Positions 1-64,000 of a stretch of 64,000 nt of DNA are shown here, piece by piece. The position numbers and the translations under genes were made by a program. Under the pieces are notes generated by a model that saw nothing but the letters and a program-made list of their open reading frames with translations, did no database searches and had not been told where the DNA came from. Positions within the stretch are counted from its first letter, which is position 1. Every line of letters begins with the position of its first letter. The stretch comes from Podarcis vaucheri (Eukaryota): NCBI GenBank assembly GCA_965113315.1, contig OZ220370.1; one strand, given 5' to 3'.

Positions 1-435
1 TACCTTGTCACAACTTTGTAAGGTTTCGTAGTTAGGCATTGTTGGACCTTATGACGGGGGAGGGTAGGTGTGGCCATATCACCTGCCCCTCCAAGCTTAA
101 GGGTATTCCGTTAAAGGAATCCGGGGGTGTGGTCTTGTCCGAAGCCCAGGGCGGGGGTAGGGCCATGACACAACCCTGAGGGGAACATCTTGGGGAGCTT
201 GAGTTGGTCTGCATCAACGGGGCTCCCCTGTCTGGTGGTTTATCCTTACCCGACTTCCTGCGCAAAGGGCAGGACTCAGATATAATCAGGTCCATTCAGT
301 GCCTAAACCAATACCGCTCACAGTCTGTAATCAATAAAGTTGTGGCCAAAATTTGCCCAATAACATTAACATAATATCTGTGTCCTGGTGTCTTATTCTC
401 TATGAGGGGGTGGTTGCGGGGTCTTGACACGCAAA
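1..435 (+). mobile_element. LTR-like structured repeat, copy A (5' part outside the window)
   Basis: Shares ordered motifs with 11203-11979: CACAACTTTGTAAGG, TTAGGCATTG (32-41), TATTCCGTTAAAGGAATC, TAGGGCCATG, CAGTGCCTAA (297-306), AATAAAGTTGTGGCC (333-347), GT-rich tract, ends CACGCAA. Confidence 0.75.
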
Positions 436-7294: not shown

Positions 7295-9069
7295 GTATAG
7301 GTGTTCTTCCCTTCTTCAGGAAAGAAATATATGTGCATTTTAACTCTCTCAGAGTAAAGGTAGCGAGTATAGCCTGTAATACCCCCGACTCGGGGCAGCC
7401 TGTCCCGTTTAACCACCTTGGGATTCTGCTGCCCAAGATGGCTGCCATCAATTGACCTCATTTTTGGGGCAGCCCTGCTCTTAGCACCACCATCACCAGC
7501 TTTCAGATGCTACCTTCTTCACCTTACGAACAAAATGGTTATGGGAAAAGCAGAGATAGCATGAAGAACACATACACAAACTTGCACAATGTATTTTCTT
7601 GGCTCATTTCAATATTCAGAAGTAGTATGTTAACATACAAACTGTTCTGCTAAAACAGGTCAGAGGTCAAACATCTCTGGCCTGCAAGCCTGTTCTTCTC
7701 TACTGTCAGTCAAGATTTTCTTTCCACACTCACATGAAGTATTTGTGAATGTGTCTTTCCTTCCAAAGAATTCTGCTGTTGAAAACTGTTGGCTTTTTGT
7801 TTTTAGATAGGCTGCTCCTAACAAAGTGACATTTTTTTTAGTAATAGCCAAAAGCTGTTAATCTCCCTGCGTCCAAATGAGGGTTTGCTTTCCTTTTGTG
7901 TGTTTCCTCCTCTCCCTTCCTCTCTCTTTTTGTCTCCTTTCAGAAGCGTTAGCAAAATTTAGAAGCAGTTGAATTGGTTGACGATGCCATTCTAGTTTAA
8001 CCATAATTAAGATTAATTTTTATTTAGCAAACAGCTATGCTGTGGAAGAGTTCAGACTACTGTTTGACATCATAAATCATGATTAGGAAGCAGTGAAATG
8101 CTTACGCCTCTCCCCCCCACACACAAAAAAGAGGTTATATAAATAAAATATAAAGAAAAGCATAACACATTAATAGCTACAGCAGGTAATTAATTGTGAA
8201 ATTGCAATCCCTTTTTGGATTTAGGAATCCAAAATCTCCCCCCCCCCCCAAAAAAAAAGCATCCTGGGAACTGTGGTTTGTTACTGGTGCTAGGAACTGT
8301 ACCTCTTTGAGAGGTACAGTCCCCAGCATTCTTTTTTTTTTGGGGGGGGGTGCTTTAAATGTGTGTATGAACTCATTAACACAGTTTGTGCATCCCCCAC
8401 CCTCCTATTCCCTTGCAAAATACAAAAGTGGATAAGGAGAGAACCAGGTAATATGGAATATTGTCTCTCACTAAGAGAAGCTAGTTTTAAGCTAAACCAA
8501 ATTTTGGCATAGCCTCTCCTCTTCCCGGAGGGGAGGGGCTGTGAGCGGGAATCACTTCCTGCACTCGCAGGGTGTGTACGGCTGGGCCCCCTGCGTCAAT
8601 GGAATCCTGGGCCCGTGTCATGCACCCCAGCCAGCCAATCTGGTTGGCTGGTGGGCGTGGCTTGGCCATTTTAAAATGGCCGTGGGCCCACGAGTCCTTC
8701 CTTGTTTCCAGGCTTCCTTGGATCACCCTCCCTCTAGGTTTTGCTTCTGCACTTGACCTTGCCATGGACCTTGGTTGGTCGCCTTGGTTGCCCAAGGGGC
8801 CTAGTAGCAATTTTTTCCACTTGGCAGATAGCAGATCGTCACAGCTTTGTAAGGTCTGGCGGTTAGGCATTGGAAATGTGTTGTGTGTTGGAGGGGAGGT
8901 TGTGACCATTGCCTACCCCTCCCCTTTAAGGGTATTCCATTAAAGGAATCTGGTGGTCGTGGTTCCTGTCCGATGCCCAGGTGGTGGCTAGGGCCATGTC
9001 TTGACCCTCCGGCGACTCTAGGGGAAAGCTTCCAGCTGATTCGCATCTACAAGCTCCCCCTTGTTGGGG

Positions 9070-9286
9070 GCCTGTGTGGTGTAGTGGTTAAGAGGGGTAG
9101 GCTCGTAATCCGGTGAACTGGGTTCGTGTCTCCGCTCCTCCACATGCAGCTGCTGGTTGACCTTGGGCCAGTCACACTTCTCTGAAGTCTCTCAGCCCCA
9201 CTCACCTCACAGAGTGTTTGTTGTGGGGGAGGAAGGGAAAGGAGAATGTTAGCCGCTTTGAGACTCCTTCAGGTAGTGAAAAAGCA
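9070..9286 (+). mobile_element. Squam3-type tRNA-derived SINE (3' end in gap)
   Basis: GTGTGGTGTAGTGGTTAAGAG..CGTAATC..GGTTCG head and GGAAGGGAAAGGAGAATGTTAGCCGCTTTGAGACTCC body, near-identical to 30841-31086. Confidence 0.9.
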
Positions 9287-9419
9287 NNNNNNNNNNNNNN
9301 NNNNNNNNNNNNNNNNNNNNNNNNNNNNNNNNNNNNNNNNNNNNNNNNNNNNNNNNNNNNNNNNNNNNNNNNNNNNNNNNNNNNNNNNNNNNNNNNNNNN
9401 NNNNNNNNNNNNNNNNNNN
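9287..9419. other. Assembly gap (N run)
   Basis: Ns in sequence. Confidence 1.
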
Positions 9420-9651
9420 ACCCTTGTGTGACTCCCTGCAGAGTGGGCAGGAGTCAAGTATAGTTTGTTCTCATCCAATGCCTAAGCCAATACCTCTCAC
9501 ATTCTGTAACCAATAAAGTTGTGGCCCTTTTTAGCCCATTAACCTAAAATACTTGTGTCCATGTGTCTTATTTCATCATGAAGCAGGGAGCGGGGCCTCA
9601 ACTCACCAACATTTTAGCTGCTCCAAAGTGAAGGGAGTTCATTTACAACAA

Positions 9652-11075: not shown

Positions 11076-11202
11076 CCTTTTCTATACTAGCTATAATGCA
11101 TGAACCTGGTGCCTTCCATATGTTGTCGGACTCCAACCCCAATCAGCACCAACCAGTGTTGATAATATGAACAAAGTGTGTTCTCCCTGAAATGAGAGCA
11201 CA

Positions 11203-11979
11203 TGTTGTGGTGTGGTCTGCCAGGCCAACCCTCTGTTGCCAGGCAGGTTAAAGGGTATTGCCTGGAGCAACGATTGGATGGCCGGGTTGCTGGGGCAAAT
11301 TGCATGTTGCAATTGGGTGGGTGGGACCAAAAGCTTTAAATATTGGGTCACTCCGCTTTTGCTTTCTCTTTCGTTGAGTGCATCGGATCACCCACCCGCC
11401 CTGAGTTCCGGTTGACCTTGCTATGCCTGTCATGGGGTCGCCTGCCATTGGGGCAGGGGCCTAGTAGGAATTTTGTCCATTTGGCTGATTGGCTGGTGCC
11501 ATTCGGTTTTTGCCTACTACCTAGCAATTCATCACAACTTGTAAGGTTGCGGTTAGGCATTGGTTATAAAAATTGATGGAGGAGGGGTAAGGATAGGCTG
11601 GGCCTGCCCCTCCAATGGTGGTGTGCAAGGGAATTCTGTTAAAGGAATCCTGGGGCTTGCCATGATTTCGTCCAGTCCCTGAAATGGGACCAGGGCCTGT
11701 AAGCCTTGGGGAGCAGGTTGGGTGAGCGGTGAGGGCCTGGGACCCAGCTCAACTGCTCCCCAATATTGTTTTCCCTTCACTGGCTTCCGAGGGAGTTTGG
11801 AAAGTCAGTTCTGTCCCAGGCGGGGGAACAGGTAGTCTTAACCAATGCCTAAGCAACCACTCACTGATTATGTATTTTAATAAAGTTGTGGCCAAAATTA
11901 TGCCAAAAACCTTAAACAAAAATTATGTGTGAATTGTGAATTATTTTGAGGGGTGGCTTGGGGACCTCAACACGCAACA
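11203..11979 (+). mobile_element. LTR-like structured repeat, copy C (uninterrupted, 777 bp)
   Basis: TG..CA termini with short inverted repeat TGTTGTG / CGCAACA; TATA-like TTTAAATA at ~11335; AATAAA 11879-11884; no clear 4-6 bp TSD. Confidence 0.8.
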
Positions 11980-12955
11980 TTTGGAGAGCACTAGCGTTGG
12001 GGAAAGCTCTTACAATGTGTCTTGTAACTGTGATATGTAGCAATTGCATTATGTTAAACTGCTCAGGCTTTATGATTCAAGGCAGGCTATCAGAGCTGAA
12101 GAATCATATCCCAAAACCGAAACGTTAAAAGTCTCTCTTCCTTGGGAGTTAATAAAATTCAACTCTCATTTCATAGTTGATGCTAATGATTTGGCACTTT
12201 TTATACTTAGAGGGATGCCTAATTCAAAGCAAATGTTTTCCAATTATTACTTGAAGGCTTCATTAGCTCCCCTAATTTCCTGTTGTCTTTGGAGGGATTT
12301 GCTCAGGTGAAAACTTCTATTTAGCTTTGCCTTGTTAGACACCCAGTGAAACTAGACTTTGGAAGAATGCTCCTTCTGAATGGACAAATGGCAGAGGAGC
12401 ACTTCGATGAATGAAAGCCACAGTGGTTTTGTTTCCTGTGGGAATGTTCTAGAACCATCTTTTAATAGAAAAAATATTTCTACATGTTCCACCACCACCA
12501 CCTCACTCTGCCATAAACTTACTGGTAGCATATTTGTCAAATCACTTGAGGAAAGAGCTAGAGCTGTCTAGAAAAACAAGGAAGTGCTAATTAAATTCCC
12601 TTCCATCTTCCCCAGTATTTCAGCAATGACTTCTGATAATGATTTGGATATCAGGAGGACATTGTCTATCACTAGGAATATTCAGAATTTCTCCCTGCAA
12701 GTAGCCTTGTGGATACTACTCTGTGTGATGTCAAGGGAAGAGAGCTTAAAATGTTTGTTCCCCTGTGGGAGGTTTGGCCATATTTCTGTCCCTTCAGGCT
12801 GGTCCTGAGTCAAAATGCATTATGCGCCCAGCATACCAGTCACTCTAACTCCCCATAATTCTAACTCCCCAAAAGCCTTGGAGAAGGGGAGAACACTCAC
12901 TTCCACACCAGAATGATGCCACAAGACCTCTCTTTTGCGAGGAAAGACATATGCT

Positions 12956-23842: not shown

Positions 23843-24223
23843 TAGAACATGAGACTCTTAATCTCAGGGTTGTGAGTTCAAGCCCCATGTTGGGTGAAAG
23901 ATTCCTGGATTGCACGGGGTTAGATTAGATGACCCTCGTGGTCCCTTCTAAGTCTATGCAGTGGTACCTTGGGTTACATACACTTCAGGTTACAGACACT
24001 TCAGGTTACATACGCTTCAGGTTACAGACTCCGCTAACCCAGAAATAGTATCTCGGGTTAAGAACTTTGCTTGAGGATGAGAACAGAAATCGTGCAGCAG
24101 CGGGAGGCCCCATTAGCTAAAGTGGTGCTTCAGGTTAAGAACAGTTTCAGGTTAAGAACGGACCTCCGGAATGAATTAAGTACTTAACCCGAGGTACCAC
24201 TGTATTTCTATGATATATGATTC
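23843..24223 (+). mobile_element. tRNA-Lys(CTT)/CR1-tail SINE, split by a MITE
   Basis: CATGAGACTCTTAATCTCAGGGTTGTGAGTTCAAGCCCCATGTTGGGTG (CTT anticodon arm intact), then TAGATGACCCTCGTGGTCCCTTC; tail resumes at 24203 (TTTCTATGATATATGATTC). Confidence 0.8.
23959..24202. mobile_element. Tc1/mariner (Tigger-like) MITE, CAGTGGTACC TIR
   Basis: TIR CAGTGGTACCTTGGGTTA / TAACCCGAGGTACCACTG; near-identical to 33028-33269; internal CTTCAGGTTA repeats. Confidence 0.9.
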
Positions 24224-25640: not shown

Positions 25641-26021
25641 ATGCAATTAAACTTGCCCCTACACTCCTCTCCCCTGTAGTCTTAAGATGAGGTATGAGGC
25701 ACATGGCCATGTTTCATGGGGAATGGCCTCAGAAGCCAACTTAGTATCTCCATCAAGCCTAATTAAGGTTGTGGGTCAGAGTTTTCCCTCTTCGGCCTTT
25801 CCAAATGCCTTTCCTCTTATGACCTTCTCCGTATGGCAAGGTAAGGTTTGAATCTGAATGCTGACCATATTCAAGGTTAGACTGGCAGGCAGAAGAGAGG
25901 GGGCCTTCTCAGCGGTGCTGCCTGTAGTTTTGAATTCCCTCCCCATGGAATGACCTGCTCTGTTGCGCAGTTTAGAAGGATGATATACATCTTACACGGG
26001 CAAGCTTTGGGAAATAAAATA

Positions 26022-26209
26022 CAGTGGTACCTCTGGATACACACACCTCTGGTTGCGTATCCTTCAGGATGCAAACGCAACAAACCCGGAAGTATTTTTC
26101 TGGGGTTTGCCGCGCGCGCATGTGCAGAAGTGGCACCTCCAGTTGTGAATTCTTCGGGATCTGATCGGAGCTCCAGAACAGATCCCGTGCGCAACCGGAG
26201 GTACCACTG
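26022..26209. mobile_element. Tc1/mariner MITE, CAGTGGTACCTC TIR
   Basis: TIR CAGTGGTACCTC / GAGGTACCACTG with TA TSD. Confidence 0.9.
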
Positions 26210-28099
26210 TACACCAAATAGTGCTGGATTCCTTCCCACCCTCTGCCACTTGGAGGGATATGATTGGATGCTAAGATAGAATATATTTATTAGATATTAT
26301 ATTTCCTTCCTCACGTTTGTGGGTTCAGCAGAGTGCATCCCTTTGCAGATTAAAATGGAAGCCTAGATAGGCTAGTTTTAGCCTTTCAGTTTAAGTAATC
26401 CAAGCTGCTTTAAGGCAAACTGGATTCTCCTGGTATTCCCCCCCTTCCTCCCCCTTCAATCACACAAACAGTCTTGTAAAAGGTAAAAAAAAAAATTTAC
26501 TCAGAATACTAGTTGAAGAGTAACAGATACATCAGCTTTGTTCAGGCAGGCTTAAAATGGTAATTCGGTTACAAAGACATACTTTAGCCCAGCTTAAAAT
26601 GGAGTCTGAGCACTGGAGATGCTTTCTCCAGTGGGAAGTGATGAAAAAGAAGATGTGCCCAGGCAGGTAAGATAATATATATAGCTACACCATCCCCCTG
26701 GTAGGGCACAGTGGGAGATTCTCTCACAGAGTCCTCTCTAGCAAACTTACAGGAAAACTCTGTGAGCTTCAGCGCCTGTCATGTGCCTATCTAGCAAAAC
26801 ATGAATTGTTGGTTTGACTGCATTTTAAATATCCCACAACCCCTGCCACCTTGTTTATACACCTTAATCTTTTTGATCCTCCTGTCTTCAGTTAGTTCCC
26901 TTTTACAGGATTCGAACTGCTCTTTGAGCTGCAATACACGTAATATTGTGTATTATGTGCTGCTGACGGTCTTCAGGAGTATTGTGGGTTTCAATGCTGG
27001 AAGCTTCTACAAAGGTTCTATTGAGACTTGCCAGTAGGATATCAAATCTCAGAAGAAGCTTCTTTCAGAGATGTTGTTTACCAGCCCACCCTTCATTTCC
27101 CAGACAACTGTTTTCTGTGGGGCAGAAAAGGGGGCTATATAATAATGCACATACAGAGAGAGCCACAGAGAAGCATTCCAACTTCCCCAAGCATCAGGCT
27201 GCTGGTGTTTCTTAAAGATGCCAAGGCTTGGACTTGATTAAGTTTTCATGATGAGATCATGCCATGGGCCTTATCAGAGATGCACCAGTCTACCAAGTGT
27301 GCAGTCGTGTCTGCATTCAGTTGACATTCAAAGGAGGACTTGTTTATGTATCCCAGTCAGAGGTAAACATCACAGGAAGTCCTACCAGACAAATGCAATT
27401 CTGTCTGCTCACTCAGCTGGTACTGCTGCTTTAATAATGTCTGAACAATGTCTGAAGGCAATCATAGCTGTATGCAGCCATCAGTAGTGCCTTTCTAAAT
27501 GAGCCCTTAGTGTTCAAACTTGTATCATAAATGGTGTTGCTATCAGGGCACACTAGCGAAACACACATACAGGATGGGAGGGAATTATCTCTCTATTGCC
27601 ATTCTCTGCACATCCATGTCTTAAGCAAAACTCTGGAGGCCATATCATATTGCACATAGGCTGCTGCTTATGAAAGCTACAGACCTAGCAACACACGAAA
27701 CTGAACATGCCCGTTTGCTGTCTGTGATATTGTACCCCTGAATGCAAAGTCAGCTAGGATGACATGTGCATGGAAACTAAAGCAGTGCACACATTCCCTT
27801 TGTTGCTTCAGTAATCACATGCAGAGGCTGAACAAGTTGTAGCTGCAACAAAATGTTGCCGTATGGAATGCTCCATTCTTCCTCCTCTCCTCCTTTTCCA
27901 TATCTCCCAGTGTTTTGTTGCCACTCAGCATGCTCAATACTTATAGGCCTGGGAGGAGGGGTTCTCCCCTTAGAGTCCCCCCCTCCTCTAAACCATGGCT
28001 TTCTCCAGAACATACTGATACCTCCCTCTTCTTTCCCAGTGGCCATATTACAGCCACAATCCTCTCAGCAGTCACCTACTGAGTTTGCTGTTAAGAAAG

Positions 28100-29204
28100 G
28101 GTGATGGCGATGTCCTCTGGCTCTCCAGAGGTTGCCGAACTACAAATGGGATCCTCTTTAATGAGGGCCCTGGTTGTACACGAGCCCTTGAGACAACCTC
28201 CGCCAGGTTGAAGGTGCTGGGCATGGCCCAGGCCTTGTCTATATGGCCCCACAATCACACCAGGCCATTTGAGCCAATCAGTGCAGGTGGCGTGATTGGT
28301 GGGGGCCTATAAAAGCGGCAGTGCGACGTGGCTGAGGCACTTGCTTCACGCTGCCGAATACCCACCCTCCCATCCCTATTTGTAGGTTTTGCTCCTTTGG
28401 CCTTGCTTCAGATACTGGCTGGTCGCCTGTTTTGGAACAGGGGCCAGGTAGGAATTTTTCCATTTGGCAAATTGGCAGTGGCCGCTTGGTTTTCACCTAC
28501 CACCTTAGCAATCGTTATAACTTTGTAAGGTTTGGCAGTTATGCATTGGCTTAATGAAGTGTGTGTGTGTGGGGGGGGGTGATGCGGCCATCACCTGCTC
28601 CTCCAGAAATAGGGTATTCCAGTAAAGGAATCTGGAAGTTCTGGATCTCATCTGAAGTCCGCTTGAGGGGCTAGGGCCATGCCAGGACCACAGGAGCCCC
28701 GGGGTGAGCTTTGTTGGTCTTCATCGATGTTGCTCCCTCGTTTGGTGTTTACCCTTTCAGACTAGCACCCAGAGAGGCAGGAGTTAGTTATAGTCTGCTA
28801 CCAATGTCTAAGCCAATATCACTCACTTTGCTGTAATCAATAAAGTTGTGGCCTAAATTTTGCCCATTAACTTAAACCAAAATTATGTGTCAGTGTGAAG
28901 TTACAGTCATACCTCAGATTAAATGTGCTTCAGGTTGAGCACTTTCGGGTTGCGCTCCGTGGCAACCCAGAAGTAACAGAGCATGTTACTTCTGGGTTTC
29001 GCTGCTCGCACATGCGCAGACACTCAAAATGACATCATGCGCATGCGCGGAGGCGGGAAAACGCGGCCCGTGCACACGCAGATGCACCGTCACATCTTAC
29101 GTTCCATTCAGCATGCGAATGGGGCTCCGGAACGGATCCTGTTTGCATCCCGAGGTACCACTGTATTTACTTGAGGAAGGGTTTGGGGGCCTCAGGGCGC
29201 AACT
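28100..29204 (+). mobile_element. LTR-like structured repeat, copy D (MITE inserted near 3' end)
   Basis: CCAAT 28274-28278, ATTGG 28295-28299, TATAAAA 28308-28314, U-rich loop motif 28447-28501, AATAAA 28839-28844, ends GGGCGCAAC. Left boundary approximate. Confidence 0.8.
28904..29163. mobile_element. Tc1/mariner MITE nested in copy D
   Basis: TIR CAGTCATACCTC / GAGGTACCACTG, TA TSD, related to 26022-26209. Confidence 0.88.
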
Positions 29205-30100
29205 CCTCCCATCCCTACCTAGCATGGAAAATGGCCAGGGTTTAGCAACTTCTAAAATGCCAAAGGTTCCCCAGTCCTACTCTACACATTCAAATATGAC
29301 TCATTCAATATGGCTCCAATTGGCACTGTTAAAATGTTGATAGGATGTGTCTGCTTGTGGACTGCAATGTTTCATGGAATGGACATCTCCAGACATGGTC
29401 CCAGGTCACATGTGTGTTGTGCTGAACAAATCTATATTTGGAATTAGATCAGGGTCTATATAGGTGATTTTTTTATTATTATCTCCTCTTCCCTACTGAG
29501 AAGAGTTATTGTCAATTGACAAGTGCCTCACCTCACTTCCATTCCCCTCCCCACTTAGTGTGAGGCAAATCTGGTTTTGCATTAAGACTGCAGCCTTAAA
29601 AAAAAAAAATCAGTGGGGCTGAGCTCTTTATATAAATAGTTACCTTTGAAATATATGTAGTTTGGAAAGACTGAACATTTTTGACAGGCAACAAAATTGT
29701 TTATTTAAGATTCCCCCATGCATCTCCTCCTCAAGTTAATTTCCAGTAGGATAGTAGATGAAGCAGGCATACACTAATGCCAGAAGAAGGTTTAGATTGA
29801 AAAAGTTAGAGTTTTATTACCACAAACTGGAAATGCAAATAGCCAATCGCTTGTTTCAAACTGTGCAAAGTTAATTGATAAATCACACCTGCATTGGCCA
29901 TTTATTCTGTTCTAGTTGTGCATATAGCTGACATTTAAGGCTCATACATTACTTCTTTCATCTATAAATTTCTTAAATATTACAAATATGACACCACTCC
30001 TCTGCCACCAACTCCATGTGCTTCCAGAAGACTTCCTTGGTGCTATCTCTCTCTCTCTTTTCTTTCAAATTAATCCTTAAGACCCATTCTAGGTTATAAC

Positions 30101-30840: not shown

Positions 30841-31086
30841 GCCAGTATGGTGTAGTGGTTAAGAGCGGTAGTCTCGTAATCTGGGGAACCGGGTTTGTGT
30901 CTCCGCTCCTCCACATGCAGCTGCTGGGTGACCTTGGGCCAGTCACACTTCTTTGAAGTCTTTCAGCCCCACTCGCCTCACAGAGTGTTTGTTGTGGGGG
31001 AGGAAGGGAAAGGAGAATGTTAGCCGCTTTGAGACTCCTTAAAGGGAGTGAAAGGCGGGATATCAAATCCAAACTCTTCTTCTTCT
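30841..31086 (+). mobile_element. Squam3-type SINE, full length
   Basis: GCCAGTATGGTGTAGTGGTTAAGAGCGG head, ends AAATCCAAACTCTTCTTCTTCT; ACCCCA on both flanks. Confidence 0.92.
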
Positions 31087-32975: not shown

Positions 32976-33027
32976 CAGCAAGCTTTTCTGGGTAGATGAA
33001 GAGGTCTCTGCCTTAGGTTTAGAAATA

Positions 33028-33269
33028 CAGTGGTACCTCAGGTTACATACGCTTCAGGTTACATACACTTCAGGTTACAGACTCCGCTAACCCAGAAATA
33101 GTGCTTCAGGTTAAGAACTCTGCTTCAGGATGAGAACAGAAATCATGCTCCAGTGGCGCGGCGGCAGCAGGAGGCCCCATTAGCTAAAGTGGTGCTTCAG
33201 GTTAAGAACAGTTTCAGGTTAAGTATGGACCTCTGGAACGAATTAAGTACTTAACCTGAGGCACCACTG
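33028..33269. mobile_element. Tc1/mariner (Tigger-like) MITE
   Basis: TIR CAGTGGTACCTCAGGTTA / TAACCTGAGGCACCACTG, TA TSD. Confidence 0.92.
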
Positions 33270-33330
33270 TAATACAAAACGAACGCCTACCTTTAGTTAT
33301 GTAACTTCATTCCAATGTAAAATGTATGTG

Positions 33331-33500
33331 TCAAAACGCTATAAAAGAGCCATGAATTACATATTATTACCAGACTTCTAAACAACAACAAAGCGAATGC
33401 AAATAGTCAAATGCATCAAAACGCTACAATAGAGCCATGAATTACATATTATCACCAGACTTCAAAACAACAACAAAGCGAATTCAAATAGTCATATGTG
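33331..33500. repeat. Tandem duplication, 85-bp unit x2
   Basis: TCAAAACGCTA..AGAGCCATGAATTACATATTAT..CCAGACTTC..AAACAACAACAAAGCGAAT..CAAATAGTCA starts at 33331 and 33416. Confidence 0.9.
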
Positions 33501-50362: not shown

Positions 50363-50973
50363 ACTGAGGTAATTATTTGGATGGCTTCATTTATTTTCTG
50401 AATGTCTATCTCACCTTTCCTTTCAAAGGAGCCCAGGGCCGCAAACACACTCACAATAGTTTTTTTCTTTCCTAAAATAGTCAAAACACTCTAAAAGCAA
50501 TTGTACTTTAAAGCGTCTAAAAACAGTTATAGTTAAAAACATAATTTCATCCAGTTATCTCAGGGGTGCCAGGAACAGCAGTGTAGAAGAGAGTTCAGTG
50601 GGAATATTTTGATTACACCATCTAATTTGTAAGAGGAACTGCAATAATTTCATAACCAGGCAGTCAAACAGGGTTGAGAATTTCATCAGAGCCAAGACCA
50701 GTCCTGGGCCTAGCTACCAACTTAAAATAACAGAAAAGAAAATGAAACTAAAGTAACTGCTTTTCCCCTAAGGCAACTGCCACCCCTGAGACCACAGCTC
50801 TCATCAACTCCAAATACTTTTTGAACCAAGCACATGCTGTGTGTAGAGTCACAAAAACTTTTTTCTTGACGTTTTGTGGCATTTTGGGAGGTTAAACTCT
50901 ACAGATACAGCTTTCCCTTTAGCTATTCCCTATCCATGCATTTACTCTTGCTTTTTTATTGTCAAGCAACGTA

Positions 50974-51349
50974 CAGTGGTACCTCGGTTTTCAAACAGCT
51001 TAATTCCCGAACAACTTGGAACTCGAATGCTGCAATCCCGGAAGTCAGTGTCCCGGTTTGCGAACTTTGCTTCGGAAGCTGAACATGCTCCTGAGCTTCC
51101 GTTTTCAATCTTGTGCTGCAAATTTGCCTCCCCCCATTGTAATCAAAGCTTTCCGTTTCCTATTGCATTGTTCCGAGGTGATATTTGGAGCTTATATTTG
51201 GTGCTTTTGTCTTTGTTGATTTTTGTGTTTTAGTTTGTGTGGCTTTTCTGTTTCTGTGACTTTGTTTTATGATTGATTGATTGATTGAGTGACTGCGGAA
51301 ATGGATAAAAGTCCCCCAACCAAACAATGACTATCATCAGTGCAGGTAA
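50974..51349 (+). mobile_element. Tc1/mariner (Tigger-like) element, left arm only
   Basis: TA|CAGTGGTACCTCGG terminus; no matching right TIR seen. Confidence 0.65.
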
Positions 51350-57558: not shown

Positions 57559-57749
57559 NNNNNNNNNNNNNNNNNNNNNNNNNNNNNNNNNNNNNNNNNN
57601 NNNNNNNNNNNNNNNNNNNNNNNNNNNNNNNNNNNNNNNNNNNNNNNNNNNNNNNNNNNNNNNNNNNNNNNNNNNNNNNNNNNNNNNNNNNNNNNNNNNN
57701 NNNNNNNNNNNNNNNNNNNNNNNNNNNNNNNNNNNNNNNNNNNNNNNNN
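57559..57749. other. Assembly gap (N run)
   Basis: Ns in sequence. Confidence 1.
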
Positions 57750-60807: not shown

Positions 60808-61112
60808 GTGTGTAGGGCAGAGTTTGTAGGGCATCAGTTGAAGAAGGAGCAAAAAGGGTTTTCTTGTGTCTGTGTGTTTCTTTGAGGCTGATTAGCTGTT
60901 TTCCCTGTGTAAAGGTCAGAGGGGGCAGGGTTTCTGTTGAGGCAGGGGATTAGCTGTGGGAGGAGCTTATCAGAGTTTGTAGGGCATCAGTTGAAGAAGG
61001 AGCAAAAATCCATCTTTTAGATTTAGGGGAGCTAGTCTCAAACGTTTGTTGAGGGAGATCTAGGTGTTTTTTTTGTGTGAAGGAAGTTATTTGTCCTGTC
61101 TTCAAGCTTTTT

Positions 61113-62177
61113 ATGATGGAGGAGCTCTGTAGCCAACCCCAACGACACGATCTCAAGATGGAAGGGGAGGGAACAGCTGCAGTCGCCTGCAATTCCTGCG
61201 CAATGTTTGCCATCTTGCCAAAGGTTGCAGGCAGCTTTACCTGCAGCAATTGCATGTTGATTGCCCTCTTAAAAGACAAAGTCCAGCAACTGGAGGAACG
61301 TGTAGCTACGCTCCAAAGAATTAGAGAGCTGGAGCTCTTCTTGGAAGCAACAGAGCACACCGTCTCCACCAAGGAGGAGACAGGGGACTCCCCTGAGAAG
61401 GAGTCTAGTTCACCAACACAGGAGCCAGATATATGGAGAAACGTGACTCAAAGAAGTAGGAGGCCCAGGGTTCACTTAGAAATACACAATCGCTTTGAGG
61501 TCCTCTCCCCTAGCATGGAAGACGAAGAGCAGACTCCATTTGAGGATCTCTCCCTCATTACAGTCGATCAGGTATATGAAGACGAGCAGCAAAGTCAGTC
61601 CTCAGGGAATGTGCAGGCGACCTTGGAACGGACAGCTCACGGAAGAACCCCGACCAAACCCAAGAGGAGGCGTGTAGTGGTGATAGGGGATTCCCTACTG
61701 AGGGGAACAGAAGCAGTGATCTGTGGGCCTGACAAGATGTCTCGGGAAGTGTGCTGTCTCCCCGGGGCTAAGATCCAAGATGTAACTGAACGACTGCAAG
61801 GAATCATAAAACCCACTGACAAATACCCCTTCCTCTTGGTTCATGTGGGAACCAACGACACTGCAAGCAATAGCCTCCAGAAGATCAAAAGAGACTACGA
61901 GGCTCTCGGCAGGAAATTGAAGCAACTAAATGCACAAATTGTCATCTCATCTGTCCTCCCAGTTGAACGACGTGGCCCAGGGAGAGAGGGGAAAATAGTG
62001 GAAGTGAACAGCTGGCTTCGCAAATGGTGTAAACAGGAACGGTTTGGATTCTTAGATCACGGACTGCAGTTTCTTGAAGATGGACTTCTGGCAAGTGATG
62101 GGCTGCATCTCACAACGGTTGGGAGAAATGTTTTTGCAAAAAATCTCAGAAACCTCATCAGGAGGGCTTTAAACTGA
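61113..62177 (+). CDS. CR1 ORF1 protein (C4 Zn finger, coiled coil, SGNH/GDSL esterase-like domain)
   Basis: CNSC..CSNC, heptad LLKDKVQQLEERVATL, NRFEVL, VVVIGDSLLR, LPGA, VHVGTND, DGLHL, ends RALN*. First ATG 61113 (alternative 61158); track start 61077 is GTG. Confidence 0.93.
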   Translation: MMEELCSQPQRHDLKMEGEGTAAVACNSCAMFAILPKVAGSFTCSNCMLIALLKDKVQQLEERVATLQRIRELELFLEATEHTVSTKEETGDSPEKESSSPTQEPDIWRNVTQRSRRPRVHLEIHNRFEVLSPSMEDEEQTPFEDLSLITVDQVYEDEQQSQSSGNVQATLERTAHGRTPTKPKRRRVVVIGDSLLRGTEAVICGPDKMSREVCCLPGAKIQDVTERLQGIIKPTDKYPFLLVHVGTNDTASNSLQKIKRDYEALGRKLKQLNAQIVISSVLPVERRGPGREGKIVEVNSWLRKWCKQERFGFLDHGLQFLEDGLLASDGLHLTTVGRNVFAKNLRNLIRRALN

Positions 62178-64000
62178 CTAATGTGGGGGAGGGAGACAGT
62201 GCTCCTGAAGGTAGGAGTCTATCAATAAATGAAGATGATCATCCAAATGTCATAGACCAAATGGAGCAAACAGCACGCGGACCTAGTGGTGGGAGGAAAA
62301 AATCCTTAAATAAGAGACACGGGGGAATGATTAATGGACTTCAATGTCTGTACACTAATGCGCAAAGCATGGGAAATAAACAAGATGAGCTTGAGCTCTT
62401 GGTACAGCAAACTAAATATGACATAATAGGCATCACTGAAACCTGGTGGGATAAGCCCCACGATTGGAATGTAATAATGGGGGGATACAATCTATTTCAG
62501 AGAAACAGACCAGACAAGAAAGGAGGAGGAGTGGCGTTATATGTCAGGGATGTGTATACCTGTGAAGAGATCCAAGATTTAGATCCTCAAAGCCAAAGTG
62601 AGAGCATTTGGGTCAAAATTAAGGGAGAGAAGAATAACAGAGACCTCATTGTGGGAGTTTACTATAGATCCCCAAGCCAAACGGAGGACATAGATGATGC
62701 CTTCCTGGAACAGATGGCCAAGCATGCAAAAGGAAGGGAGATAGTAGTAATGGGGGACTTCAATTACCCAGATATTTGTTGGACGTCAAACTCAGCCAAG
62801 AGCATAAGGTCAAACAGATTCCTCACTGGCCTTGCAGACAACTTCATTGTCCAGAAAGTGGGAGAAGCAACAAGAGGAACAGCCATTTTAGATCTGGTCC
62901 TAACCAATGTTGATGACCTGGTTAGTGGGGTAGAAGTGGAAGGATCATTAGGCGCGAGTGATCATGCTCTTCTGAAGTTTACTATACAGCGGAAAGGAGC
63001 AGCCAAGCATACTAGGACTCAATTTCTTGACTTTAAGAAAGCCGACTTCATAAAACTTAGGGAAGTGCTGGGTGAGATCCCATGGACAACAATACTAAAA
63101 GGAAAGGGAGTTCATGATGGCTGGGAGTTTGTTAAGAGGGAGATACTAAAAGCACAACGTCAGGCAATACCAATGAGACGGAAACATGGAAGGTGCCTAA
63201 AGAAGCCAGGGTGGCTATCTAAAGAACTTTTAACTGAATTAAGATTAAAAAAGGATGTGTACAAAAAATGGAAAAGGGGGGAAACCACCAAAGAGGAATT
63301 CAAACAAATAGCCAGCACGTGTAGACACAAAGTCAGAAAAGCTAAAGCACAGAATGAACTCAGGCTTGCTAGAGAGGTTAAAAGCAACAAAAAAGGCTTT
63401 TATGGGTATGTTCGTAGCAAAAGGAAGAACAAAGAAACAATGGGGTCACTCAGAGGAGAAGATGGTGAAATGCAAACAGGGGACACAGAAAGGGCTGAAC
63501 TACTCAATGCCTTCTTTGCCTCAGTCTTCTCCGATAAAGAAAACAATGCCCGACCTGAAGAATTTGGAGCAAATGATTCAGCAAAGGAAACACAGCCCAG
63601 AATAACTAAGGAGATAGTACAAGAATATTTGGCTAGTTTAGATGTATTCAAGTCTCCAGGGCCAGATGAACTGCATCCAAGAGTATTAAAAGAACTGGCA
63701 GATGTGATCTCAGAACCACTGGCAGTCATCTTTGAGAATTCCTGGAGAACAGGCGAAGTCCCGGCAGACTGGAGGAGGGCAAATGTTGTCCCTATTTTCA
63801 AAAAGGGGAAAAGAGAGGACCCAAATAATTACCGCCCAGTCAGTCTGACATCAATAGCAGGGAAGATTCTGGAGCAGATCATTAAGCAAACAGTCTGTGA
63901 GCACCTAGAAAGGAATGCTATGATCACCAATAGTCAGCATGGATTTCTGAAAAATAAGTCATGTCAGACTAACCTGATCTCGTTTTTTGACAGAATTACA
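62168..64000 (+). CDS. CR1 ORF2 (APE endonuclease plus N-terminal RT region), partial
   Basis: Absent from the ORF track because it has no stop in the window. Hand translation: CLYTNAQSMGNKQDEL, IIGITETWWD, GGGVALYV, VGVYYRSP, VMGDFNYPDICW, LDLVL, SDH, KSPGPDELHPRVLKEL, WRRANVVPIFKKG, NYRPVSLTS, SQHGF. Frame open from 62099; first ATG 62261. Confidence 0.93.

What the first reader, a model, noticed from the sequence alone, without database searches (positions are those of the whole stretch)
28420..28501. ENE-like (poly(A) triple-helix) U-rich internal loop conserved in an LTR-like lizard repeat
Seen: copy D reads GGTAGG-AATTTTT-CCA...TGG-TTTTCA-CCTACC (28447-28501); copy C reads TAGTAGG-AATTTTGT-CC...GG-TTTTTG-CCTACTA (11462-11519). 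Both form an outer stem, two opposing U-tracts and an inner CC/GG stem, and the outer stem differs in sequence but stays paired. Directly 5' is a hairpin that covaries across three copies: CCTTGG/CCAAGG (8782-8797), CCTGCC/GGCAGG (11441-11457), CCTGTT/AACAGG (28426-28441). Established: a U-rich internal loop between short helices is the architecture of the KSHV PAN RNA and MALAT1/NEAT1 ENEs, which clamp an A-rich or poly(A) 3' end in a U-A.U triplex and block decay; ENEs are also described in plant and fungal transposons. Inference: this family carries an RNA-stabilising ENE ~340-360 nt upstream of its own AATAAA. I am not aware of it being described in a squamate repeat. I recall a similar GGAAGGAATTTT..GGTTTTT..GCCTTCC motif in 3' regions of some non-mammalian CR1s, which would suggest a module shared between retroelements, but that is unverified.
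Basis: partly seen in the sequence, partly recalled or inferred. Interest (0 to 1): 0.82.

Follow-up and report, generated by a model that had tools for sequence, protein, structure and literature searches.

The report
U-loop hairpin in lizard retroelement repeat
An abundant old lizard retroelement repeat keeps a small folded RNA module, one well-supported hairpin followed by a hairpin with two facing runs of U, but the evidence does not show that it is a poly(A)-tail-clamping "ENE".

Summary
Four same-strand copies of an LTR-like repeat lie in the window: A is cut by the window start, and B lacks the 3' half of the motif. The 5' hairpin (28421-28445) is well supported: three compensatory pairs in three copies, all cells paired.

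The ENE-like hairpin (28447-28501) is the RNAalifold consensus of copies C and D. Its support is one compensatory pair plus family-wide differences that are all neutral to the fold or improve it.

The bare architecture is common: 30 such motifs in this window, against 16 in shuffles. No Rfam family matched. The U tracts are short or interrupted (5 and 4 U in D; UUUUGU and 5 U in C). The lower G-C pairs are separated from the U tracts by AA and CA/G spacers. No transcript or poly(A) tail was shown.

New here: read depth shows thousands of copies of the module. A conserved long-range helix closes a ~270-nt domain and brings the AAUAAA close to the module.

My reading is a conserved cis-acting RNA module of a lacertid retroelement. 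I put an ENE function at about 0.15.

More copies could not be fetched.

The parts
28421..28445 (+). Hairpin 1 of copy D: outer GGUC/GGCC, bulged G, inner 6-bp stem CCUGUU/AACAGG, loop UUGG
   Evidence: Local and full-length folds keep it. Three pairs are compensated across B, C and D and 100% of cells are paired. The pattern occurs 3 times against 0.01 expected.
28447..28501 (+). Hairpin 2 of copy D, the ENE-like motif. Lower stem 28447-28452/28496-28501. 5' strand AAUUUUU 28453-28459. Upper stem 28460-28462/28487-28489 and 28465-28468/28481-28484. Apical loop 28469-28480. 3' strand UUUUCA 28490-28495.
   Evidence: Local minimum-free-energy fold, z -2.0. RNAalifold consensus with C. One compensatory pair, 28447/28500. 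The full-length fold does not keep it.
11436..11461 (+). Hairpin 1 of copy C (inner stem CCUGCC/GGCAGG)
11462..11519 (+). Hairpin 2 of copy C: 7-bp lower stem, 5' strand AAUUUUGU (G interrupts the U run), only CC/GG next to the loop, 3' strand UUUUUG
   Evidence: Its own minimum-free-energy fold pairs the inner part differently.
8777..8829 (+). Copy B: hairpin 1 (8777-8801, inner stem CCUUGG/CCAAGG) and only the 5' half of hairpin 2. The 3' half is deleted.
   Evidence: Alignments; fold (z +0.4 for the remnant)
28529..28550 (+). 5' strand of a long-range helix (core UUAUGCAUUGG in D, UUAGGCAUUGG in A, B and C), about 30 nt after hairpin 2
   Evidence: Duplex energies are -31 to -34 kcal/mol in A, B and C against -15 to -18 in shuffles, and -20.9 in D. 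It is in the RNAalifold consensus with one compensatory pair, and in the minimum-free-energy and centroid folds of C.
28800..28822 (+). 3' strand of the long-range helix (CCAAUGUCUAAGCCAA), ending about 20 nt before AAUAAA. Together the two strands close a ~270-nt multi-hairpin domain.
28839..28844 (+). AATAAA of copy D, in the block AATAAAGTTGTGGCC shared exactly by all four copies. A GT-rich stretch follows at 28886-28897.
   Evidence: It is the highest read-depth block.
28274..28315 (+). CCAAT (28274-28278) and TATAAAAG (28308-28315) upstream of copy D. This is promoter-like but lies in a part that is only 31-45% alike between copies.
   Evidence: No transcript start was shown.
1..433 (+). 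Copy A, cut by the window start just inside the 3' strand of hairpin 2. It keeps the long-range helix and AATAAA (333-338).
28903..29168 (-). SINE-like insertion that splits the last ~50 nt of copy D from the rest. The unit resumes at about 29169 and ends near 29212.
   Evidence: (families D7, D10)

Best explanation
The 82 bases are the 5' part of a conserved, + strand RNA module (about 28421-28550) in the terminal repeat of a very abundant, old lacertid retroelement family.

The module has three parts:
- hairpin 1, well supported by covariation;
- hairpin 2, which has a U-rich internal loop;
- the 5' strand of a long-range helix, whose partner lies just before AAUAAA. The helix closes off a ~270-nt multi-hairpin domain and places the poly(A) signal next to the module.

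The module and the poly(A) block stay 71-81% alike between copies whose other parts are barely alignable, and the module is present in thousands of copies. I therefore read it as a cis-acting RNA signal that the family needed while it was spreading. Most likely it is a docking site in the 3' terminal RNA for the element's own replication or packaging machinery, with the open U-rich loop as the accessible surface.

Shown: the folds, the covariation in hairpin 1 and in the long-range helix, and the conservation and copy number.
Inferred: that it acts as RNA in a polyadenylated transcript, and what binds it.

A poly(A) clamp is a minority possibility and is treated as a rival.
For: - Hairpin 1 has 3 compensatory pairs and 100% pairing. 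Only 1 of 500 shuffles reaches the observed score, and slid controls fall to 31-53% paired.
- A G.U pair in hairpin 1 is kept in all three copies, and the folds are better on the + strand than on the - strand (z -1.9 and -2.9 against -0.8 and -1.6).
- RNAalifold on C+D returns hairpin 2.
- All six well-supported family-wide differences from D inside the module are harmless to the fold or improve it. 28446 A>T adds a U-A pair with 28502. 28463 is in an internal loop. 28478 and 28479 are in the apical loop. 28484 G>A turns U.G into U-A. 28495 is in the spacer.
- Read depth at 80% likeness is 290,000-600,000 over 28422-28483, against about 3,000 over 28205-28390 and about 100 for single-copy flank.
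- Block identities are 71-81% for the module and 72% for the poly(A) block, against 31-45% upstream.
- The long-range helix is supported.
Against: - Only two complete copies of hairpin 2 could be read.
- Hairpin 2 is lost in full-length minimum-free-energy folds of both copies.
- Copy B lacks half of it.
- Depth over the 3' half of hairpin 2 is 5- to 20-fold lower than over the 5' half. This could mean many copies lack it or have diverged there.
- RNA reads touch only the module, on both strands, at low depth, and 97% run on into unlike sequence. No defined transcript, start or end was seen.
- No coding remnant links the repeat to a retroelement class in this window.
Confidence: 0.55

Rival explanations
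1. Hairpin 2 is an ENE-type element. After cleavage downstream of AAUAAA, the poly(A) tail folds back, helped by the long-range helix. It pairs with one U tract by Watson-Crick bonds and with the other by Hoogsteen bonds, and the resulting U.A-U triplex slows deadenylation of the retroelement RNA.
For: - Two facing U tracts are kept in C and D, and the 5' tract is kept in B.
- A class of other copies reads GGTTTTTGCCTACC on the 3' side (loose ends).
- A C-G pair abuts both tracts at the top.
- G-C pairs are present in the lower stem.
- AATAAA lies downstream, and the long-range helix cuts the path from hairpin to cleavage site to roughly 85-90 nt.
- ENEs are known in LTR retrotransposons, including inside LTRs, and are predicted in fish retroviruses (PMC12501189, PMC13541005, PMC7583470).
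- Natural triplexes can have only 3-6 triples (PMC7583470).
Against: - No Rfam family matches at E up to 10.
- A strict descriptor, with U tracts flanked directly by G-C pairs on both sides, is met by neither copy.
- AA and CA/G spacers separate the tracts from the lower stem, although the adjacent G-C pairs are reported as essential (PMC12501189; definition in PMC7583470).
- D has only 4 U on the 3' side, and C has a G inside the 5' tract.
- The inner stem next to the loop is 2-3 bp.
- The loose architecture occurs 30 times in the window.
- No poly(A)+ transcript was shown.
Confidence: 0.15
2. Hairpin 2 is not a selected structure. The block is conserved for another reason, or only by shared descent, and the fold is incidental. 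One such reason would be DNA-level protein-binding sites, for example the inverted CCAAT box GATTGGCTG or the TTGGC half-sites in the apical part.
For: - The architecture is common by chance.
- Differences between C and D are not significantly rarer in paired columns (5 of 28) than in unpaired columns (9 of 30), counted on alignment A2.
- Only one compensatory pair supports the hairpin.
- Full-length folds drop the hairpin.
- The most conserved piece is the 5' half as sequence.
- ATTGG/TTGGC motifs sit in the apical part of C and D.
Against: - All six best-supported family-wide differences are compatible with the fold or improve it.
- Hairpin 1 beside it and the long-range helix after it both covary, so the region is under RNA-structure constraint.
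- The fold is specific to the + strand.
Confidence: 0.2

Closest known systems
KSHV PAN RNA ENE (single-domain element for nuclear expression)
   Same: A hairpin with an internal loop whose two strands carry runs of U, a C-G pair closing the loop at the top, G-C pairs in the lower stem, and a position upstream of a poly(A) signal.
   Different: PAN forms five U.A-U triples and three A-minor triples with G-C pairs next to the loop (PMC7583470). Here there are at most 4 uninterrupted facing U's. AA and CA/G spacers lie between the tracts and the lower stem. The upper stem next to the loop is 2-3 bp. The motif is 340-360 nt from AAUAAA. There is no Rfam match and no binding data.
ENEs of plant and fungal transposable elements (double ENEs, TWIFB1, Arabidopsis Evade/Copia93) and predicted ENEs of stickleback retroviruses
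   Same: A retroelement context. Some of these ENEs are embedded in LTRs (PMC13541005). The Evade ENE also lies hundreds of nt from the poly(A) site and raises RNA stability and mobility (PMC12501189).
   Different: Those elements are mostly double-domain, with U tracts flanked by G-C pairs that are essential in mutational tests (PMC12501189). The lizard motif is single-domain and lacks the lower adjacency, and nothing functional is known about it. The primary paper (Tycowski 2016) was not held, so its search descriptor could not be applied.
MALAT1-like triple-helix plus mascRNA loci, reported in dozens of anole lizard transcripts (Zhang 2017, as cited in PMC10869381)
   Same: A triple-helix-type stability element multiplied in a lizard genome.
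   Different: Those loci end in a genomically encoded A-rich tract and a tRNA-like RNA cut by RNase P. Here there is an AATAAA and no consistent A-rich tract, and no tRNA-like or mascRNA match at Rfam gathering score.
Structured R / 3'-UTR signals of retroelements (retroviral R-region hairpins, LINE/SINE shared 3' stem-loops recognised by reverse transcriptase; from general knowledge)
   Same: Short covarying hairpins in the transcribed terminal part. They are the best-conserved block across diverged sub-families and non-coding copies, and they sit next to the poly(A) signal.
   Different: No sequence or model match to any described signal. The class of the element and the binding partner are unknown.

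Membership tests
ENE (poly(A)-binding triple-helix stability element) | Stem-loop with an internal loop whose two strands are mainly U and can form about five U.A-U triples | tested here: inconclusive
   D has AAUUUUU facing UUUUCA, which gives 4 facing U-U positions. C has AAUUUUGU facing UUUUUG, with the run broken by G. B has six U on the 5' side and no 3' side. Other copies read UUUUUG on the 3' side.
ENE (poly(A)-binding triple-helix stability element) | G-C pairs directly adjacent to the U-rich loop (A-minor platform; essential in Evade mutants) | tested here: not met
   At the top, a C-G pair abuts both tracts. At the bottom, AA (5') and CA or G (3') lie between the tracts and the first G-C pair. 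A strict descriptor finds neither copy. Definition from PMC7583470 and PMC12501189.
ENE (poly(A)-binding triple-helix stability element) | Lies in the 3' region of an RNA that ends in poly(A) or an A-rich tract | tested here: inconclusive
   AATAAA is 338 and 360 nt downstream, and a long-range helix shortens the path. No transcript end or tail was seen in the reads.
ENE (poly(A)-binding triple-helix stability element) | Match to a curated ENE covariance model | tested here: not met
   No Rfam 15 family at gathering score in the window. Nothing ENE-like at E up to 10 around D or C. I could not check which ENE families Rfam holds.
ENE (poly(A)-binding triple-helix stability element) | Both flanking helices supported by covariation | tested here: inconclusive
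   Lower stem: 1 compensatory pair in 2 sequences. Upper stem: none, 1 one-sided change, 1 broken cell. More copies could not be fetched.
ENE (poly(A)-binding triple-helix stability element) | Binds oligo(A) and stabilises a reporter RNA | not testable with these tools
   Needs gel shift or melting with A-tracts, and an intronless reporter assay.
MALAT1-like triple helix with mascRNA | tRNA-like RNase P substrate and genomically encoded A-rich tract downstream of the U-rich hairpin | tested here: not met
   No mascRNA-menRNA or tRNA-like match at Rfam gathering score. The sequences after the motif are not A-rich.
LTR of a retrovirus or LTR retrotransposon | TATA-like promoter and AATAAA within one repeat; TG...CA ends with target duplication; paired copies around gag-pol | tested here: inconclusive
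   CCAAT/TATA-like motifs and AATAAA are present in each copy. The 3' end reads ...CA in B and C. The 5' end and target duplications could not be fixed because the upstream parts are only 31-45% alike. No Pfam domain was found in 100 ORFs of 64 aa or more between the copies.
Ngaro-type (tyrosine recombinase) retrotransposon split direct repeat | A1 ... B1-A2-B2 repeat layout around gag / RT / recombinase genes | not tested
   This is a lead from earlier notes of the scan only. No such genes are in this window.

The most novel reading that the evidence does not exclude
The U-loop hairpin is a working, non-canonical poly(A) clamp: a single domain with spacer nucleotides at its base. It would be carried by thousands of copies of a squamate retroelement repeat and brought next to the poly(A) site by a conserved long-range helix. 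That would be the first ENE-type element of an amniote transposable element, and one that depends on a higher-order fold for proximity.
Probability: 0.15. Interest if true: 0.7.

Novelty: new member of a known kind. Interest (0 to 1): 0.35.

Why it matters
If the module is a replication or stability signal, it marks what a very successful lacertid retroelement family needed in cis. It would also give a handle for identifying that family's autonomous partner.

If it did bind poly(A), it would extend triple-helix RNA protection to amniote transposons and loosen the structural definition of an ENE.

As it stands, this is a cautionary case. The loose pattern of stem, U run, stem, U run, stem occurs dozens of times in 64 kb of lizard DNA, so it cannot carry an ENE call on its own.

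Tried and rejected
Attempts to get more copies, which is the decisive test:
- Exact-pattern scans of viral contigs gave 0 hits.
- A metagenome-contig scan gave 6 hits, all chance matches in bacterial coding sequence.
- A protein word search with the spurious ORF that spans the module in C found no candidate.
- Read laying is capped at one call. It gives per-site letters, not linked pairs, so covariation across the family could not be counted.
- The search of earlier findings by sequence was blank.

Readings considered and dropped:
- Sm site. AAUUUUU is followed by CC, not by G-purine.
- MALAT1-like module. There is no tRNA-like part.
- Hammerhead or other ribozyme of Penelope-like repeats. There is no Rfam hit.
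- NFI palindrome. The spacing is 12, not 5.
- Provirus pairs A-B and C-D. No coding remnants were found, and the compensated differences between C and D argue against one integration event.
- The SGNH hydrolase ORF as evidence for a Ngaro element. It is ORF1 of a LINE.

Other limits:
- Papers by Tycowski (2012, 2016) and Mitton-Fry (2010) are not held, so ENE criteria come from reviews and the Evade paper.
- The N runs at 9287-9419 and 57559-57749 were left as they are.

Full report
**What is there**

The window holds four + strand copies of a repeat that ends in the exact block AATAAAGTTGTGGCC:
- A, 1 to about 433, cut by the window start.
- B, about 8510-9611. It carries a SINE insertion and an N run, which I left untouched.
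- C, about 11110-11981.
- D, about 28105-28902, resuming after a SINE-like insertion at about 29169-29212.

The copies are 70-78% alike where BLAST can align them. A block-by-block count shows the likeness is concentrated. Hairpin 1 is 72-81% alike, hairpin 2 is 76% (C-D), the next 48 nt are 71%, and the poly(A) block is 72%. Everything upstream of 28420 is only 31-45% alike. Each copy has CCAAT- and TATA-like motifs upstream, but they are not alignable, so the transcript start is not established.

A LINE ORF1 elsewhere in the window is 94% identical to a Podarcis muralis protein. The genome is therefore a lacertid lizard.

**The observation**

The quoted letters and coordinates are correct.

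Hairpin 1 (GGUC, bulged G, 6-bp stem, loop, then the return strands) occurs in B, C and D. Its inner three pairs read UGG/CCA, GCC/GGC and GUU/AAC. Three pairs are changed on both sides, every cell is paired, only 1 of 500 shuffles reaches the score, and slid controls fall to 31-53% paired. This is sound covariation even with three sequences.

Hairpin 2, the ENE-like motif, is complete only in C and D. B has lost its 3' half through a deletion.
- In D the proposed fold is the local minimum-free-energy structure (z -2.0).
- In C the outer stem is kept but the inner part pairs differently.
- RNAalifold on C+D returns the proposed architecture.
- Support from the two copies is one compensatory pair (G-C in D, A-U in C), one U.G to U-A change, and two unpaired cells.
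- Differences between C and D are not clearly rarer in paired than in unpaired columns: 5 of 28 against 9 of 30.
- In folds of the whole 540-556-nt stretch up to the poly(A) site, hairpin 2 is not retained in either copy. Hairpin 1 is retained in D.
- The folds are better on the + strand and use G.U pairs, so the RNA sense is that of the AATAAA.

**Is the architecture more than chance?**

No, not by itself. I wrote a descriptor that fits both copies: lower stem of 5 bp or more, a run of 4 or more U in each loop strand of up to 8 nt, and an inner stem of 2 bp or more. It finds 30 places in the window on both strands, against 16.3 +/- 3.7 in dinucleotide shuffles. A tighter descriptor that only D meets finds 5 against 3.1. 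A strict descriptor, with U tracts directly flanked by G-C pairs on both sides, finds nothing, including C and D.

**Family-wide evidence from reads**

I laid Logan contigs of two DNA runs on 28050-28950 at 80% likeness.
- Summed depth is about 100-230 on single-copy flank and about 3,000 over 28205-28390.
- It is 290,000-600,000 over 28422-28483, and again 75,000-770,000 over 28639-28700 and 28825-28886.
- The module and the poly(A) block therefore exist in thousands of copies that stay within 20% of D. D's upstream part is shared by only tens of copies.

Six well-supported family-wide differences from D fall inside the module, and all are neutral to the fold or improve it:
- 28446 A>T (78% of depth) adds a U-A pair with 28502.
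- 28463 T>C lies in the 2x2 internal loop.
- 28478 and 28479 lie in the apical loop.
- 28484 G>A (91%) turns U.G into U-A.
- 28495 lies in the spacer.

None of the 40 listed differences lies in a U tract or in the six lower-stem pairs. However, 217 further rows were not shown, so this is only suggestive.

Loose ends show a class of copies reading GGTTTTTGCCTACC on the 3' side, and a class with GGAAGG in place of GGTAGG on the 5' side.

Depth over the 3' half of hairpin 2 is 5- to 20-fold lower than over the 5' half. This may reflect short islands that seed alignments poorly, or real loss. The B-type deletion is not among the listed joints.

**RNA**

One bulk RNA-seq run of a related species put about 20 + 12 reads per position on the module, on both strands. 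Of these, 97% run on into unlike sequence, there are none on D's upstream part, and there are no clustered starts or ends. So other copies are present in RNA at a low level, probably inside other transcripts. D itself is silent there. No poly(A)+ transcript of the repeat was shown. The "RNA?" run X17 covers the flanks evenly and is probably DNA.

**A new piece of anatomy**

About 30 nt after hairpin 2 lies UUAGGCAUUGG (UUAUGCAUUGG in D). Its complement CCAAUGCCUAA lies about 20-25 nt before AAUAAA.
- Duplex energies are -31 to -34 kcal/mol in A, B and C, against -15 to -18 +/- 3 for shuffled partners. None of 300 shuffles reaches them. D gives -20.9.
- The helix is in the RNAalifold consensus of A, C and D with one compensatory pair. 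It is also in the minimum-free-energy and centroid folds of C.
- The adjoining short helix differs between copies while staying paired: UGGC/GCCA in B, GGUUGC/GCAACC in C, GGUUU/AAACC in A.
- The helix closes a ~270-nt multi-hairpin domain and puts the module and the poly(A) signal on either side of one junction.

This agrees with the first-stage note on this window (s1-855024). It also agrees with notes from other windows that describe a ~290-nt folded domain just before the poly(A) signal of an abundant lizard repeat. Those notes assign the repeat to Ngaro-type elements, which I could not test. One hundred ORFs of 64 aa or more between the copies have no Pfam match. The only SGNH hydrolase ORF here is ORF1 of a LINE whose ORF2 has endonuclease and RT domains.

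**Comparison with ENEs**

[quoted passage not shown] PAN forms five U.A-U and three A-minor triples (PMC7583470). In Evade the G-C pairs next to the U tracts are essential (PMC12501189).

Against an ENE here:
- The top of the loop fits, with a C-G pair next to both tracts. The bottom does not: AA and CA/G intervene.
- The tracts give at most four uninterrupted facing U's.
- The helix next to the loop is 2-3 bp.
- No Rfam family matches, even at E 10.

For an ENE:
- The retroelement context. ENEs occur in and near LTRs in plants and fungi and are predicted in stickleback retroviruses (PMC13541005, PMC7583470).
- The distance to the poly(A) site is not disqualifying given Evade.
- The long-range helix brings the tail close.
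- Individual copies are old and decayed, so single defects in C or D do not settle the state of the family founder.

I put the ENE reading at about 0.15.

**Verdict**

- Hairpin 1 and the long-range helix are real conserved RNA structures.
- Hairpin 2 is probably real, at about two in three.
- The ENE label is not earned.

My best reading (0.55) is a cis-acting RNA module of the retroelement's terminal transcript. It is conserved because the family's machinery needed it, and the U-rich loop is its open docking surface.

The scan met the same kind of hairpin in other windows of this genome. Follow-ups there reached a similar conclusion, which I treat as agreement, not as evidence.

The decisive test is covariation and U-tract decay across the thousands of copies. 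It could not be run.

Noticed in passing
window 61077-64000 (+): A LINE of CR1/L2 type. ORF1 (366 aa) has an SGNH/GDSL esterase domain. It is followed directly by an ORF2 with endonuclease and the start of a reverse transcriptase, running off the window end. ORF1 is 94% identical to a Podarcis muralis protein and 82% to one of Zootoca vivipara, which places the genome in Lacertidae.
   Followed up: partly
window 28903-29168 (-); also 23954-24207, 26017-26214, 33023-33274, 50969-51046: A SINE-like family with ends ACAGTGGTACCTC... / ...GAGGTACCACTGT. One copy is inserted in the last part of copy D. It is very abundant in DNA and RNA reads (depth 200,000-380,000).
   Followed up: no
window 9070-9269 and 30841-31040: Two 200-bp copies, 94% alike, of another SINE-like repeat. 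The first is inserted in copy B next to the N run at 9287-9419.
   Followed up: no
RNA run X23 laid on window 28439-28514: Eighteen RNA reads agree (0.91) on an expressed copy elsewhere in which GGTCACC-GTCA is followed directly by GGGGCC. That is hairpin 1 reduced to its outer stem. A sub-family with a shortened hairpin 1 is therefore transcribed in a related species.
   Followed up: no
window 28612-28632 (D), 11642-11662 (C), 8929-8949 (B), 102-122 (A): A small hairpin is kept in all four copies: AUUCC, a 6-nt loop (AUUAAA or similar), then GGAAU. It lies inside the closed domain and is in the RNAalifold consensus.
   Followed up: partly
window 33326-33495: A tandem duplication of an 85-bp unit, 91% alike.
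   Followed up: no
window 11098-11135 and 28118-28150: C and D share an upstream stretch (..TTCCATATGTTGTCGGACTCCAA.. / ..CTCCAGAGGTTGCCGAACTACAA..) that B lacks. In C it follows a tRNA-like SINE head at about 10900. It may be a separate repeat and not part of the unit.
   Followed up: no
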